From contig OZ218959.1 of NCBI GenBank assembly GCA_965112735.1, forward strand, positions 1,178,001 through 1,242,000: 64,000 nt of DNA, read 5' to 3'. Position numbers and translations under genes: made by a program. Shown in pieces: positions 13,506-26,997 of this stretch. The notes under the pieces were generated by a model. The model saw only the letters and a list, made by a program, of their open reading frames with translations. It searched no databases and had not been told where the DNA came from. Source of the stretch: Phaeosaccion multiseriatum. Lineage: Eukaryota; Protista; Ochrophyta, other classes. Positions within the stretch are counted from its first letter, which is position 1, and every line of letters begins with the position of its first letter.

Positions 13506-15398
13506 CGATTGATCTCAGGTACTTAGTACTTTACCACCCATCACAGATCGATGTGGTGTGGCGTGGGATACAACATGGAACCGTTGGGCGTTGGTTGCAA
13601 GTTCGAACTGGCCTGGCAACACACACAGACCTAAACAGATACACACACTCACACACACTCACTCACTCACTCACACACACACACACACTCACGATTGGAG
13701 GGCTTGAGGTCGTTGTGGCGGATGAGCTTTCCGTGCAGGTACGAGAGACCTTTGAGCAGCTGACGAGAGTAGCGCCGCACAATAGCCTCGCTGAAGGGGC
13801 CGAACACCTTCAGGGCTGCCGCTACGCTGCCTTCGCTCGCAAACTCGAGGAAGATGTTGAGCTTGGTGCCCACGCGTTGGCTGCCGAGGCACTTGATGAT
13901 GTTGTCGTGGCTCATGCTCTGCAGCAGCGACATTTCCTTCCGTAAGGCCTCCACTTGCCTGTCCTGCCTGCTGCTACTACTCGTACGCTTAGGGCGGTAC
14001 TGTGTGGGTCGCCGACTCTGGCGTATCACCAACTGCTGCTGCTGCTGCTTCGACTCAGGCAGGCATTCTCTCCCCACCCCCCCTTGCCCAAGCTTGTCCT
14101 CCCTGTCTTGAAGCTCGTCGAGGTCAGACAAAGCTTGGCAATCCTTCCCCTCGTCCTCTTCCTCCCCTTTCTCCTCTTGGTGGGATTGCTTGTCGTTGTG
14201 TTGGTGGTGGTGGTGGTGGCGGTGGTGGTGGTGTTGGTGATGATGGTGGTGATGGGGAGCCCGGCGTGGCCGCTGCTGAACCTTCTTCAGGCTAACTTGC
14301 TTCACAGCAAAGCAGAGGCCTGTCATTGCGTTTAGACGGCGTTCCGGGTGTGCACGTCCGTGAGCAAGACGAGGATATATAGAGAGAGAGGCACCAGAGT
14401 ATCAGCTGGGCCGCAGAGGTAGGATGCCCAGCAGTTTCTCAGTACTTGTACTTCTTTGGTACATCGTGGGGAGTAAAACGTCTTTCCTTTCTTCCTAACA
14501 CTGTCGCACGCGTGCTCTCACCTGTGCGGAGATCGAGAGCGCTATAGACCCGGCCAAAGCTGCCTTGCCCAAGGAGAGTCCCCCGCTGCCACACCAAGTC
14601 TCGTCCCCAAGCATCCGCCTCCTTCCTCGCGCTCTCCTCATCGTGTCCATCCTCTCCATCGCCCTTCTCCTCCTCCTTCCCCTCCTCCTCCTCATTCTCG
14701 CTTGTTTGCTCTATCGAGCAACGTGTCGAGTGACTAGTGCGTTCAACGCTTCTATCCCTTACCTCATCGCCTCCGGCCTTGGTTGCTCCAGGCAAGATCG
14801 CCCTCTGTGCTGCAGCCTCACCGCCCCGAAACGGTGCCACCGTAGCCCCTGCTGGGGAATAACGACCGGTCCCTTTCCGCAGCAGATCACCGAGCCGCCC
14901 TCCATCGGTTGTTGAATGCCACGTAGAACTCAAAAGTTTGGTGGTAGTGGCACACTTTACTTCCTTCAGCCACCCACCCCCTTCCTTGTTCTCCTCCTCT
15001 TCTTCATCATCACCATCGTCAATCATCTGAGACTCGATCCGCGATTTCACTGCCTCAAAGGGCGACTTTTTCGTCCTTGCTCCTGCGCTGCTTGTGTTGC
15101 TGCTACTGGTGGCGCCACTGCCATCGCTGCTGCTGTCCTCGTCGCTACTGCTGGTTCCACTACTACTGCTACAGCTACTACTTGCGCTGCTACGACCGCT
15201 ACTACTGGCGTTGCTACTTCTTGAGCTGCTACCACCACTGCGACAGCTCCTGCTACTACTGGAGCTGCCAGCACAATCTTTCCCCAGCACCGCCCTCAAC
15301 AACTTCTGATTGGGGTTAAAACCCTTCGCAAGCAGCTGCTTGTGAAGAATAGCGTACAGTGCATCGGGACCTTTCCCCTCTGTATGGAAGATGTCCAT
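11356..15398 (-). CDS. Ser/Thr protein kinase, STE11/MEKK (MAP3K)-like, with long insertions
   Basis: Exons 15398-14522, 14319-13693, 13384-12857, 12482-12302, 12169-11356. Motifs WQRGTLLGQGSFGRVY, FAVKQV, LRKEMSLLQSMSHDNII, IFLEF, HNDLKPSN, IKLADFG, GTPLFMAPE, DVWSLG, CLQTDPLLRP. Intron 12856-12483 has a GC donor. Confidence 0.88.
11836..12038. repeat. Pure (CCT/GGA)n run of about 200 bp, encoding poly-Gly in the last kinase exon
   Basis: Uninterrupted TCC repeat. Confidence 0.95.
13411..13505. repeat. (CAA)n microsatellite in a kinase intron
   Basis: About 31 pure CAA units, lying just upstream of the acceptor on the minus strand. Confidence 0.95.
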
Positions 15399-15716
15399 GC
15401 GCTTTGGAAGGAAAAGAACTCAACTGTTCCAGTTTCAGTTTCAGCTGCCCCTCAGCTCGACTCGTTGACATACGCAATTTGGGTTTCAGCTCGTGACTGA
15501 TCCTTTGTGGCGACGACCCTTCCCTGTATCAAGAAGCAGAGAACGAATTAGAAAGAGCAGTAAACAGAGCCAATCACCCCCTGCGTCAGTCACCTCCGCA
15601 CAGTATCCAGTGATAGCTGATTGCACTGCATTCGGCTTTGAGGATACTGTCTTCCAGCAACACAAACTCCGCTCTCCACCCTCCCATCCGCTCTCTCTTT
15701 GCCCCCCAAGCACACC

Positions 15717-16782
15717 ATGGCTGACTCTGCGGTGAACCCCAAGGCGTACCCTCTTGCGGGAGCAGACCTGACTGTGGCCATTCTGGACCTTGTGCAGCAG
15801 GCGAGCAACTACAAGCAGCTCAAGAAGGGAGCGAATGAGGGTAAGGTTCAGAGGCGATGGCAAGGGGAGCGGATTGTGGAGAGGACAAGGAAAGAAGAGG
15901 TTACTGTACGACTGAGGAATACATCTAGCATGCTTATAAGTGGTCGTCATCGCTCTCTCTGCTACTGCTGCTGCCGCCGGTGTCGGTGGATGTCTTGGAT
16001 CCGCACCTCTCCTCTTCCCCGCCCCCCCCCCCTCCCCTCTCCTTCTGACCCCTCTTCCCTCCTTCCCTCCCTCCCTCCCTCCCCCCTTCGTTCCTTCCTT
16101 CCTTCGTTCCTTCCTTCGTTCCTTCCTTCGTTCCTTCCTCCTTTTCTCCCCTAGCCACCAAGACGCTGAACCGCGGCATCTCCGAGTTCATCGTGCTGGC
16201 GGCGGATGCCGACCCTCTGGAGATCCTCCTCCACCTCCCCCTCCTTTGCGAGGACAAGAACGTTCCCTACGTGTTCGTGCCCAGTAAGGTGCGGTCCTCA
16301 GCTTCAATTTGAAAATGTCTGTGCTGGAGTCAGGGGTTCAATGGAGGGAAGGAAGAGAGACATGAGAAAAGTTGTTTTGAATGTTTGTGTCACACCACGT
16401 GTCTTCCGTTCCCTGGCCCCTTGGGGGTATGGATGGGTCTCAAGGCGCCGCTCCGCCACTCCCTCATATGATGTCCTTTTTTAGCGAATTGTTCTTATCA
16501 GCACCAAGAGCACTCTGAGGAGATTTTCAGTTTTTAGGTACAGTGGGCTGAATGCCTTGACCTCACCAAAGACCACGAAACACCTACATTATGACCCTGA
16601 ATCCTGACACCGCTGCCCTCTTTCCTCTGCTCCTTGCGATCACACACCCGCAGGTGGCGCTGGGACGTGCGTGTGGAGTGTCACGACCGGTGATTAGCTG
16701 CAGCGTGACGACTAACGAGGCCTCGCAGCTCAAGGACCAGATCCAGACACTTAAGGACCAGATCGAGCAGTTGCTCATCTGA
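15717..16782 (+). CDS. SNU13: Snu13/15.5K/NHP2L1, K-turn-binding protein of box C/D and U4 RNPs
   Basis: Exons 15717-15840, 16155-16288, 16654-16782: [14 protein letters not shown]...[68 protein letters not shown]...IEQLLI. Confidence 0.98.
16465..16554 (+). ncRNA. Intronic box C/D snoRNA-like RNA in SNU13 intron 2
   Basis: CAT + ATGATGT (box C-like, 16468-16474) ... CTGA (box D, 16548-16551) + ATG terminal stem. Outer stem TCAAGGC/GCCTTGA, internal hairpin TGTTCTT/AAGAGCA and a C'-like TGAGGA. The sequence before box D, TAGGTACAGTGGG, is 12/13 complementary to the conserved LSU rRNA segment CCCACUGUCCCUA. Confidence 0.7.
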
Positions 16783-17729
16783 GGAGGGCAAGCAAGCCAA
16801 GCAATCTAGCAGCTGCTCATCTCCAGGGGGGCAAGGGAAGCAAGAGTAGACGCAATACGATTCGATTTGATTCGATTCAAGTCTGATGTGCACGGGACCG
16901 TGTGCGCACGAGCGCGGCTCTACCTTCGCCTCTTACCGTGTCTCCTCCCCCCGTTTAGGTAGAAGTTTAGGTAGCCAGGGGCGAGGTGGATTTGGGGAAG
17001 AGGGGCGGGGGGGGGGGGAGGTCGCACACAATAAGCCCGAATGACGGTGGCGACAGAGGGAGACGGCGGAAGGGCTCTCGAATCAAGAGCCCACTCCTGC
17101 CACGTCATATCCCAGGCTAATACAACAGGACAGGCGCTGTGCCACCGTTGGTTCTACACTTGCATGGTTCTACACTGGCACGCGTGGCCCACAGCTGACG
17201 GCTCAGGAGTGTGTGTATGTTTGTATTTGTATTAATGTACAGTGGGCGGGGGGGGAGGTCGCAGGGGCTGGATATACAGCAGCAGAGCTAACACGCCCCC
17301 GAGAGAGCAACACAGCACTGACGCCCACAAGTGACCGTGCGTCAGCCATTTGCCGCCTCTTCCTTTGTGGCGTTTCACAGGCCAAGACAGCGCCTGCTCT
17401 GAGGCAAAGGACTGCACGCACAGAGCCGCAACTCCGACTTTTATTGTTTCCCCAAAGGGAACGGAAGCAGCTGTTGTGTTGTTGCTGCGCTGTGCATAGA
17501 TCGATCGCTCCCTTCCGGCCATCAATGAGCCACACAGCGTCAGCACACGACCAGAGCGAAGACAAGTCTGTGACTGGCCTCGCCGATGTGCATCCCCGAT
17601 GACAGAGACCCAGAGGACGAGGACAAGACAGCTGCTCCTGCTGCTGCCCGCCCTGCTTCTCTGCCCCTCCCTCATGTCCCTCGCCATTCATGGTTGGTGC
17701 TGCACAAATTGACATGAGGAGGGACTCCA

Positions 17730-18468
17730 TCAAAACTCTTGCACCCCGAAGAGGTGCTTTCCCCCCTCGTAGGACGAAATCATGATAGCACAAGCCGGCG
17801 CCACTCGCATGAGGCGAGCTTTGAGGCCCGAGAAGGCGCCTTGCAGACCCTCCTGCCGCACAATGCCTAGAAGGACGGCCAAGCTGCCTTGCCCTCCCCT
17901 GGGACACGAACTCGTGCTGCAGCTTCTGCTGCTGCTGCTCGTCGTGTGGATGATGTCCTCGGTGTATGACTCCACTTGCCTTCGCGTCTTGACCACATCA
18001 AAGGGGTGCGTCACGAGAGACGCCACCGTACCTGCCCCTGCCCCGGCCACAAAGGACCGCAACATGACGTCACCAGCTTCATCGGAGGAGTTGTGCTGAC
18101 TTACTCCTGCTCCTCCTCCTCCTCCTCCTCTTCCTCCTCTCGTCCTCCGCTGCTCCTGCAGGCCCTCTAAATTGGCGCGGATGGCGTCGTATCCCACCCA
18201 ATACATGACACTGAAGGGCACGTCCCTCCACAGTGTGGGCCCCAGCCCTTTCCATAGACCCAAAAACCCGCGCTCGCCGCGCACTGTGGTCAGAAAGATC
18301 CTCCGTATCGAGGAGCGCTGCCCCTCTTCTTGGGCGAGCATCTTTGTGCGGATCAGTTCCAGAGGCGAGACCACCGTTTGGGTCATCGACCGAGCCAAAC
18401 CCCCCGCTAGCGCTGGAACGGCCGCTTGCTTCAAACCGGCGCTGGTGCTGCTACTGCTATTACTTCTC

Positions 18469-18500
<32 letters not shown>

Positions 18501-19654
18501 GCCACTACTACCACTGCTCCTGCCGCTCTGATCGCTTGTTGCCAGCCGCGCCTGCAAAGTCTCCTTCAGCGAGTCGTAGCACGTAAAGTATATGGCTGTT
18601 TGTGGCACAGCCATGAGGAGCGTGGGGCTGAGGCCGCTGTACAGGCCGCTCACCCCCTCCGTGCGGCCTGCGGTGTTGGACGAAAGTGGATTGGGGGGGG
18701 GAGAGGGAAGGAAGAATGGCAGGCAATGGCAGAGTCGTAGATGGAGGTGAGACGCACGCACGCACACACGCACGTAAGGCATACACACGCACGGCATGTG
18801 TGTCCCATCAGCCTGCTCCAGCTCCTGCCCCAGCTCCTCCCTCACCTATCCGAAACAGAGCTGACAGCACGCCTGTGCCCCGATTTATGCCGCCAGTTAA
18901 CGCCCCATTCTGCCCCCCATTGGCGATTGGTTTGGAGAGCAGGTGGACAAGCTTATGCCCCCTGTGTGGAGGGGATAGCGACAGTGGCGATGTGGTTAGG
19001 GAAATGATCACACCCTGGGGCGCAGAGATGGATACGGGAATCAGGGTGGATGGAGACGAACAACGGCAGAGGACAGACAAACGTAATGAGAGTTACATGC
19101 AACACTTACCTGGACACGCAGATATCCGTCAACCCATTTCGGACCAAGAACACGCCACAGCTGTTACAGCGGACCAAGAGGGAACTTTCCGCCTTCATGG
19201 CTGCTGATGCGGCTTCTGAAGCTGCTTCGGACACCACTGACGCTCCACTACTCGCCTGCATCCTCGTCTTGACCACATCCAATGGTGTTACTGCCAGAGA
19301 CGTGAGTACCGCCCCCACACAAGCGGAAATCATCTTCTCCAATAGCGGAGCAGCTCTTGGAGGCTGAGGAGACGGGTTGCAGTCAGAAGACCCCGGAGAG
19401 GAAACAGCAGTGGCGGCAGCCGTGGTAACAGCTGCAGCGGCTGCAGCTCCAGCCGCATTTGCGGCCGATGTCCGCAGACCCACCGGTGCTGATGTCGCTG
19501 TGTTGGATCCCAACCCTGAGCTGAGTATCCTCCGCGCCACGGCAGGCGGGGCCACGACCGGAGATGCCTGCGTCGGCTGGTGCCGCCGCTGCTGCTGCCG
19601 CTGCTGCTGAGCTCCTCCGTCTCCCCCCCTCGTTATGGCCACCACGGCCACCAT
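17730..19654 (-). CDS. Mitochondrial carrier, SLC25A39/SLC25A40/Mtm1 subfamily (probable glutathione carrier)
   Basis: Exons 19654-19110, 18961-18846, 18667-17730. Three carrier signatures (TPLDVVKTRMQ, SPLELIRTKM, HPFDVVKTRRQ). Subfamily motifs GLSPTLLMAVPQTAIYFTCYD, GLGPTLWRDVPFS.MYW, RVAPACAIMISSYE. Confidence 0.92.
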
Positions 19655-26714: not shown

Positions 26715-26997
26715 GTGATGAGCTTTAAGAAAGAAAGTGCGAATCGATATCGAAGCTTCTCAACACTGCTGAGGGTGGGCTTGGCTAGCCATGACGCATG
26801 AATCGATTAACCTTCTCCTTCTCTTCTTCTTCTTCTCCTTCTTCTTCTGGTGTTGGAGGAGCTAGAGGTGCAAATGACCTCAGTGCAATGTGTTCAACAG
26901 GGTCCACTTACTACGGTTACTGCTTTTCAGACCTTACAACGACCGTGAACTCCGCATGAGGCGCAGGCTCCATTCGACGCATTAATCAATCCCTTCC

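What the first reader, a model, noticed from the sequence alone, without database searches (positions are those of the whole stretch)
16436..16562. Box C/D snoRNA-like RNA inside the gene for its own binding protein Snu13: candidate autoregulatory splicing switch
Seen: a 90-nt unit with C-like and D boxes, a terminal stem, an outer stem and an internal hairpin, about 100 nt upstream of the acceptor, in an intron free of microsatellites. The D-guide pairs 12/13 with LSU CCCACUGUCCCUA; the D+5 rule points to the C of ACU (about yeast 25S C2333 by my count). The one mismatch creates AG|GTACAG, a donor-like site (16538), next to acceptor-like TTTTCAG and TTTTTAG. Established: Snu13 binds C/D K-turns; human SNORD86 regulates NOP56 splice-donor choice; archaeal L7Ae autoregulates through a K-turn in its own mRNA. 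Inference: Snu13 binding controls productive versus NMD-targeted splicing of its own pre-mRNA, with or without retained guide function.
Basis: partly seen in the sequence, partly recalled or inferred. Interest (0 to 1): 0.8.

Follow-up and report, generated by a model that had tools for sequence, protein, structure and literature searches.

The report
Candidate snoRNA in SNU13 intron
The second intron of this alga's SNU13 gene holds a stretch that looks like an ordinary small nucleolar guide RNA of the box C/D type, but it is seen in this genome only, its RNA has not been observed, and nothing supports the proposed self-regulating splicing switch.

Summary
These are a C box, D' and D boxes, a 7-bp internal hairpin, a 7-bp outer stem, and a 13-nt D guide that pairs 12/13 with conserved LSU rRNA. 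The single mismatch lies opposite yeast C2337, the snR64 site.

The host is a three-exon SNU13 gene of an ochrophyte alga. A spliced contig in a public run confirms the canonical mRNA.

The guide match alone is not significant: 2.8 such matches next to CTGA are expected per window. C box, D box and guide together appear in 7% of shuffled windows. The outer stem (2% of random places), the AT-rich island (lowest 1.4% of the window) and the position 102 nt before the acceptor make chance less likely.

Against it: the terminal stem has only 3 bp and the guide has only 8 contiguous pairs. No Rfam family matches. No counterpart was found in eight SNU13 loci of relatives or in metagenomes. No stable RNA was seen.

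Verdict: probably (about 0.55) an ordinary, lineage-specific intronic box C/D snoRNA. Chance is about 0.3. The autoregulatory switch is an untested analogy (about 0.05).

The parts
15717..15840 (+). SNU13 exon 1 (ATG at 15717; donor G|GTAAGG)
   Evidence: Translation and splice sites. The spliced contig arithmetic fits: 184 + 134 + 309 = 627 record letters.
16155..16288 (+). SNU13 exon 2
   Evidence: 98% identical to many Snu13 proteins.
16289..16653 (+). SNU13 intron 2 (365 nt, phase 0, GTGCGG...CGCAG), free of tandem repeats
   Evidence: Spliced out in the run X5 contig.
16654..16783 (+). SNU13 exon 3 with stop codon
16440..16446 (+). 5' arm of the outer (external) stem, TCAAGGC
   Evidence: Pairs with 16554-16560. 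A Watson-Crick stem of 7 bp or more in this geometry occurs at 2.0% of random places. It is part of the minimum-free-energy fold.
16468..16474 (+). C box AUGAUGU
   Evidence: G70/A71 can form sheared pairs with the D-box GA, U72 can pair with U, and G73 with C48 (reading of the sequence).
16490..16512 (+). Internal hairpin (UGUUCUU / AAGAGCA) between C and D'
   Evidence: Fold, in both the minimum-free-energy and centroid structures.
16515..16518 (+). D' box CUGA; the guide before it has only 8 contiguous pairs to LSU
16521..16526 (+). Degenerate C'-like box AGAUUU
   Evidence: Sequence only. Weak.
16535..16547 (+). D guide, 12/13 complementary to LSU CCCACUGUCCCUA (8 bp, a U.C mismatch at T16539, then 4 bp). 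D+5 points to the yeast 25S C2333 equivalent.
16548..16551 (+). D box CUGA
   Evidence: It is the only CTGA of 487 in the window preceded by a 12/13 rRNA antisense 13-mer.
16554..16560 (+). 3' arm of the outer stem, GCCTTGA
16604..16608 (+). Branch-point-like CTGAC, 46 nt before the acceptor and about 56 nt after the D box
   Evidence: Sequence only. Inferred.
16524..16543 (+). Acceptor-like TTTTCAG and TTTTTAG and donor-like GTACAG, inside the guide region
   Evidence: Present. Their use would give in-frame stops. No junction evidence.

Best explanation
Intron 2 of SNU13 carries an ordinary, lineage-specific intron-encoded box C/D snoRNA of about 85-90 nt (roughly 16465-16555). The proposed sequence of events is as follows. 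After canonical splicing, the lariat is debranched and trimmed by exonucleases down to the particle formed on the C/D motif by Snu13, Nop58, Nop56 and fibrillarin. The 7-bp external stem brings the two boxes together, because the terminal stem proper is only 3 bp. The D guide then pairs with LSU rRNA around CCCACUGU and would direct 2'-O-methylation of the C that corresponds to yeast 25S C2333. What is shown here: the sequence elements, the pairing, the gene structure and canonical splicing. What is inferred: that the RNA accumulates, that it binds the core proteins, and that it methylates. I put guide activity at that site at about 0.35 overall, because of the mismatch. Residence in the SNU13 gene gives co-expression with a core protein, as for other snoRNAs hosted by ribosome-biogenesis genes, and needs no special mechanism.
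For: C box, D' and D boxes, hairpin and stems are at the stated places. The 12/13 antisense match ends exactly at the D box and targets a universally conserved LSU segment. C box + D box + guide arises in only 7% of shuffled windows. Three further features make chance less likely. The 7-bp external stem occurs at 2% of random places. The unit is an AT-rich island with GC 40.7%, against 53-54% in the rest of the intron and 59% in the window, which puts it in the lowest 1.4%. It lies on the sense strand of a repeat-free intron, 102 nt before the acceptor and about 56 nt before a CTGAC branch-like site; that this distance is usual for intronic C/D snoRNAs is my own knowledge (Hirose and Steitz 2001). 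The intron is truly spliced. Earlier notes of this scan report many intronic snoRNAs in this genome; these are leads only.
Against: No Rfam C/D family matches the sense strand, even at E up to 10 on 151 bases. The terminal stem is 3 bp with a non-canonical bulge. The guide has only 8 contiguous pairs before a U.C mismatch. In 120/120 eukaryotic LSU sequences the opposing base is C, so the mismatch is probably real. I could not find that the target is a known methylated position: in yeast the known site is C2337, four nt away. A 12/13 match beside CTGA is by itself expected 2.8 times per window. Eight SNU13 loci of relatives hold no counterpart. The whole metagenome collection holds none for the strict pattern. 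The loose pattern gave only chance-like hits. The RNA-like run shows only a depth-2.6 contig over 16332-16494, which does not match the predicted ends. The library type is unknown and small RNAs are usually lost.
Confidence: 0.55

Rival explanations
1. Chance resemblance. The intron merely contains ATGATGT and CTGA at a suitable spacing, plus a fortuitous 12/13 match to rRNA. No stable RNA is made and the stretch is ordinary intron.
For: A 12/13 match next to CTGA is expected 2.8 times per 64-kb window. The full C + D + guide combination appears in 7% of shuffled windows, and the scan read over a thousand windows of this genome. Two other 11/12 matches to rRNA lie inside the same 100 nt, which shows how common such matches are. 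The terminal stem is weak and C' is degenerate. No Rfam hit. Fold z-score 0.12. No conservation. No RNA with matching ends.
Against: Several partly independent features coincide: the external stem (2%), the AT-rich island (1.4%), the sense strand of an intron, and the usual distance from the acceptor and branch region. These were picked after the fact, however. The genome appears to have many real intronic snoRNAs (a lead only).
Confidence: 0.3
2. A real box C/D RNA that does not methylate the predicted site. It would be an orphan, a helper that only pairs with pre-rRNA next to the C2337-equivalent site, or a guide for another RNA that matches UAGGUACAGUGGG perfectly.
For: The mismatch falls opposite the position methylated in yeast (C2337). 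There are only 8 contiguous pairs. The D' guide has no convincing target. Extra, non-guiding pairing by C/D snoRNAs next to methylation sites is documented in yeast (PMC3116282).
Against: The pairing abuts the D box in the exact register needed for guiding. One mismatch at guide position 9 is tolerated by some known guides; this is my own knowledge and was not tested. I could not search this organism's other RNAs for a perfect target.
Confidence: 0.1
3. The unit is a cis-acting sensor. When Snu13 is in excess it assembles on the intronic C/D motif and diverts splicing to the cryptic sites at 16530, 16537 or 16538. This gives a transcript with a premature stop that NMD removes.
For: The unit lies in the gene for the protein that nucleates C/D particles. 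SNORD86 in NOP56 is a precedent (PMC11028025). The acceptor-like and donor-like strings exist, and their use would give in-frame stops.
Against: No alternative junction is seen; the dominant contig is the canonical mRNA. GTACAG is a poor donor compared with the gene's own GTAAGG and GTGCGG. The unit overlaps no used splice site and sits where ordinary intronic snoRNAs sit. Relatives' SNU13 genes lack it, and Tribonema lacks the intron altogether. Stops after cryptic sites are the rule in any intron.
Confidence: 0.05

Closest known systems
Intron-encoded box C/D methylation guide snoRNAs (for example yeast U24 in ASC1; human snoRNAs in ribosomal-protein and NOP56/NOP58 introns)
   Same: One unit per intron on the sense strand. 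C box near the 5' end and CUGA near the 3' end. An antisense element abuts box D. An internal D' box is present. The unit lies about 100 nt upstream of the acceptor. The host gene acts in ribosome or snoRNP biogenesis.
   Different: The terminal stem is only 3 bp and is supplemented by an external stem whose 5' arm lies 21 nt upstream of the C box. The guide is interrupted after 8 bp. No family assignment, no orthologue and no RNA evidence.
Yeast snR64 (guides 25S Cm2337; PMC2806949)
   Same: It pairs with the same conserved LSU segment, CCCACUGUCCCUA.
   Different: snR64 methylates C2337. Here the register points to C2333 and the base opposite C2337 is mismatched, so this is not a functional equivalent. 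No sequence comparison with snR64 was possible.
SNORD86 in human NOP56 (Lykke-Andersen et al. 2018; reviewed in PMC11028025)
   Same: A box C/D unit inside the pre-mRNA of a C/D core protein.
   Different: SNORD86 is an orphan. It adopts two conformations and steers the choice of splice donor, and its NMD-sensitive isoform is abundant and conserved in eutherians. Here there is a plausible rRNA guide, a mid-intron position, no alternative isoform seen and no conservation.
Self-regulation by L7Ae-family proteins through a K-turn in their own RNA (archaeal L7Ae 5' UTR; yeast Rpl30 pre-mRNA) - from my own knowledge
   Same: A protein of the same family binds a K-turn in its own transcript.
   Different: Those K-turns overlap the translation start or the 5' splice site and act by direct occlusion. 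Here the putative K-turn is far from both splice sites.

Membership tests
Box C/D snoRNA | C box RUGAUGA near the 5' end | tested here: met
   AUGAUGU at 16468-16474. It has one deviation at the last position, which is not a pairing position.
Box C/D snoRNA | D box CUGA near the 3' end, able to form the GA/AG, U.U and G-C core with the C box | tested here: met
   CUGA at 16548-16551. The pairs can be drawn from the sequence. No structural test was done.
Box C/D snoRNA | Terminal stem of 4-5 bp flanking the boxes (K-turn stem I with a 3-nt bulge) | tested here: not met
   Only 3 bp (16465-67/16552-54), with a 2-nt bulge. My scan requiring 4 bp or more did not recover the unit. A 7-bp external stem may substitute, as described for some intronic snoRNAs; that precedent is my own knowledge.
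Box C/D snoRNA | Antisense element of about 10 or more bp to rRNA or snRNA ending 1 nt before D or D', with the target at the fifth pair | tested here: inconclusive
   12/13 with 8 contiguous bp, and the register is correct. rRNA of other eukaryotes served as stand-in; this organism's own rRNA was not available.
Box C/D snoRNA | Internal D' and C' boxes | tested here: inconclusive
   D' is an exact CUGA (16515-18). C' is only AGAUUU (16521-26).
Box C/D snoRNA | Stable RNA of 70-120 nt bound by Snu13, Nop56, Nop58 and fibrillarin | not testable with these tools
   No small-RNA run was found. The RNA-like run X5 shows only a depth-2.6 contig at 16332-16494.
Box C/D snoRNA | Match to a curated family, or conservation in relatives | tested here: not met
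   No Rfam match on the sense strand. None in 8 SNU13 loci. Metagenome scans negative or chance-like. The relatives are distant, at most 93% identical in Snu13 protein.
SNORD86-type cis-acting autoregulatory snoRNA | Lies in the pre-mRNA of a C/D core protein | tested here: met
   The host is SNU13.
SNORD86-type cis-acting autoregulatory snoRNA | Controls use of an alternative splice site that is really used, giving an NMD-sensitive isoform | tested here: inconclusive
   Only the canonical spliced contig was seen. Contigs drop rare forms, and there are no raw RNA reads and no NMD-inhibited sample.
SNORD86-type cis-acting autoregulatory snoRNA | Conservation of the arrangement among relatives | tested here: not met
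   Absent from the SNU13 genes of Tribonema (which has no intron 2), Ectocarpus, Discosporangium and four metagenomic or Logan relatives.

The most novel reading that the evidence does not exclude
The C/D unit is a sensor of free Snu13. Assembly of the particle on the nascent intron exposes or activates the juxtaposed AG|GT at 16537/16538 or the acceptors at 16530/16537, and so diverts SNU13 pre-mRNA into an NMD-targeted isoform. This would be a second, independently evolved case of the SNORD86/NOP56 principle, in a stramenopile alga and for a different core protein.
Probability: 0.05. Interest if true: 0.75.

Novelty: new member of a known kind. Interest (0 to 1): 0.3.

Why it matters
If real, this is one more unannotated methylation guide in a poorly studied algal lineage. 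It predicts a 2'-O-methyl site (yeast C2333 equivalent) that I could not match to a known site in yeast. SNU13 would join NOP56 and NOP58 as core-protein genes that host C/D snoRNAs, a tidy example of co-expression. Only the autoregulation reading would be of wider interest, and nothing here speaks for it.

Tried and rejected
(1) I first assumed from memory that the target was the conserved yeast Cm2197 (snR76) site. The published RNase H oligos and yeast-numbered rDNA loci showed this to be wrong. The target is C2333, and the D' guide's 8-bp match lies near C2197 but points to C2202.

(2) Perfect pairing in this organism through an rRNA variant is unlikely. C is invariant in 120/120 eukaryotic LSU sequences, but the organism's own rDNA could not be read.

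(3) Rfam at gathering and at permissive thresholds gave nothing on the sense strand. One multi-locus Rfam call failed internally.

(4) A search of viral contigs for rDNA was empty.

(5) Orthologue searches found no counterpart: eight SNU13 loci, blastn and nhmmer with the intron, and two metagenome pattern scans.

(6) Literature and supplement searches gave nothing usable on whether the C2333 equivalent is methylated in human, Arabidopsis or Dictyostelium.

(7) A scaRNA guide for U2 on the minus strand was rejected: the complementarity would include the CUGA itself, and no boxes fit.

(8) I did not submit the full spliced protein to the protein tools, because it has no single reference. I used exon 2 with its open flank instead.

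Full report
THE GENE. The region encodes a three-exon SNU13 gene on the + strand. Exon 1 is 15717-15840, intron 1 is 15841-16154, exon 2 is 16155-16288, intron 2 is 16289-16653 (365 nt, phase 0), and exon 3 is 16654-16783. The 128-residue product is 93% identical to Snu13 of Tribonema minus and 90-92% identical to those of brown algae. The organism is therefore an ochrophyte (stramenopile) alga. Intron 1 is filled with CTTC and CCCCTCCC arrays, while intron 2 has no tandem repeat.

TRANSCRIPT EVIDENCE. No run is on record as RNA. Run X5, labelled 'DNA?', nevertheless behaves like RNA. Its 649-letter contig (depth 362) lies on 15532-15839 and on 16652-16837. The 133-134 letters between those two pieces are exactly the length of exon 2: 184 + 134 + 309 = 627. 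Depth in X5 falls to zero in the intergenic stretch 16949-17145. This confirms canonical removal of both introns and gives a 5' UTR of at least 185 nt. Intron 2 is represented only by one contig of depth 2.6 over 16332-16494. That contig fits neither end of the predicted small RNA. At this depth and with an unknown library type, it says little either way.

THE OBSERVATION.
- C box AUGAUGU at 16468-74.
- A 7-bp hairpin at 16490-96/16506-12.
- D' CUGA at 16515-18.
- A weak C'-like AGAUUU at 16521-26.
- Guide UAGGUACAGUGGG at 16535-47.
- D box CUGA at 16548-51.
- A 7-bp outer stem at 16440-46/16554-60.

The terminal stem proper is only 3 bp (16465-67/16552-54) and leaves a 2-nt rather than a 3-nt bulge. 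My scan requiring 4 bp or more therefore missed the unit. Neither the unit nor the whole intron folds better than shuffles (z 0.12 and +1.65).

THE TARGET. I fetched 120 eukaryotic LSU rDNA fragments that sit as contaminants in prokaryotic assemblies. The search pattern left the mismatch position open and excluded what I recall from memory to be the human variant; I took none of the loci to be human. All 120 read CCCACTGTCCCT, so the base opposite T16539 is C in every one.

The RNase H oligos of van Nues et al. for L2197 and L2288 (PMC3116282) anchor yeast numbering. Five loci reproduce C2197 and G2288 exactly. In them the D+5 target is C2333 and the mismatch lies opposite C2337. C2337 is the yeast site linked to snR64 (PMC2806949). 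My own first guess, that the target was the conserved Cm2197 site, was wrong. I found no record that the C2333 equivalent is methylated in any organism, but the site lists I could reach were not informative.

IS IT MORE THAN CHANCE? Against two annotated rDNA units, 0.58% of all 13-mers in the window have at least 12/13 Watson-Crick complementarity to rRNA. With 487 CTGA in the window, 2.8 such guide-plus-box combinations are expected, and one was seen. The guide match alone is thus not significant.

Adding a C box 50-140 nt upstream brings the expectation to 0.09 per shuffled window, that is, 7% of shuffles have at least one. Three further features are each unusual:
- The 7-bp Watson-Crick outer stem occurs at 2.0% of random places.
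- The unit has a GC content of 40.7%, against 53-54% for the rest of the intron. That is in the lowest 1.4% of 91-nt windows.
- It lies on the sense strand of a spliced intron, 102 nt before the acceptor and about 56 nt before a CTGAC branch-like site.

These features were chosen after seeing the sequence, and the scan covered over a thousand windows of this genome, so I discount them. Together they still make a real RNA more likely than not.

CONSERVATION. I fetched SNU13 loci of Tribonema minus, two Ectocarpus assemblies, Discosporangium, and four metagenomic or Logan contigs that share the intron position after PSK. Tribonema lacks intron 2. None of the eight loci holds the guide within 2 mismatches. 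None shows any similarity to the intron by blastn or nhmmer. None has a convincing C/D pair with an rRNA guide in the gene.

The whole metagenome collection has no match to TGATG-N45-75-TAGGNACAGTGGGCTGA. A looser pattern gave 120 hits with no excess of G or T at the open position and no extension of the guide, which is what chance predicts. All these relatives are distant, so this is absence of support rather than evidence against a young snoRNA.

THE AUTOREGULATION IDEA. The strings TTTTCAG, TTTTTAG and GTACAG are there. The mismatch does create the GT. Use of either acceptor would meet an in-frame stop: the D box TGA itself after 16530, and TGA at 16592-94 after 16537. None of this is specific, however. 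Cryptic sites in introns nearly always lead to stops. GTACAG lacks the +5 G and differs from the gene's own donors. The only transcript seen is canonical. The arrangement is not shared by relatives.

In SNORD86/NOP56 the snoRNA is an orphan, adopts alternative conformations, and governs a donor choice whose product dominates the transcript pool (PMC11028025). None of these properties is shown here. I rate the idea at about 0.05.

VERDICT. The most likely reading (about 0.55) is an ordinary, lineage-specific intronic box C/D snoRNA that relies on an external stem and carries an imperfect guide for the LSU C equivalent to yeast C2333. Chance resemblance is about 0.3. A real but non-guiding or otherwise targeted C/D RNA is about 0.1. 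A cis-acting Snu13 sensor is about 0.05.

Noticed in passing
window 16490-16502: The 5' arm and loop of the internal hairpin read TGTTCTTATCAGC. This is identical, in the same sense, to 13 nt of a published U2 snDNA forward primer (CAAAGTGTAGTATCTGTTCTTATCAGC; PMC3464664). That is the conserved U2 snRNA stretch just 3' of the branch-site-binding GUAGUA. It is identity, not complementarity, so it is not a guide. I roughly estimate chance at 1-2% after allowing for the many RNAs compared. Meaning unknown.
   Followed up: partly
window 17237-17247 versus 16538-16548: The 11-mer GTACAGTGGGC of the guide/D-box junction recurs about 700 nt downstream, in the intergenic region after SNU13. There it stands next to a repeated GGGGGGGGAGGTCGCA motif (17010-17028 and 17250-17265). 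It may be chance or the trace of a small duplication.
   Followed up: no
window 13600-19500, run X5: Run X5, listed as 'DNA?', yields a spliced SNU13 contig and has zero depth in the intergenic stretch 16949-17145, so it behaves like an RNA library of this organism.
   Followed up: partly
L126 2396-2518: In a metagenomic relative, intron 1 of SNU13 holds GTGATGT...CTGA (122 nt, with a short terminal stem that my scan scored at 5 bp but that I could draw by eye as only about 3 bp) and an internal CTGA, 51 nt before the acceptor. No rRNA match was found for its D guide. It may be an unrelated snoRNA in the same host gene.
   Followed up: partly
window 26715-26772: A short C/D-like pair (GTGATGA...CTGA, 58 nt, 5-bp terminal stem) with a 9-nt contiguous match to LSU before the D box. 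Its context was not examined.
   Followed up: no
window 16499-16510: The stretch before D' (CAGCACCAAGAG) is 11/12 complementary to the 5' part of 5.8S rRNA (CTCTTGGTTCTG). It is out of register for D'-guided methylation, because 4 unpaired nt lie before the box. This is probably chance.
   Followed up: partly
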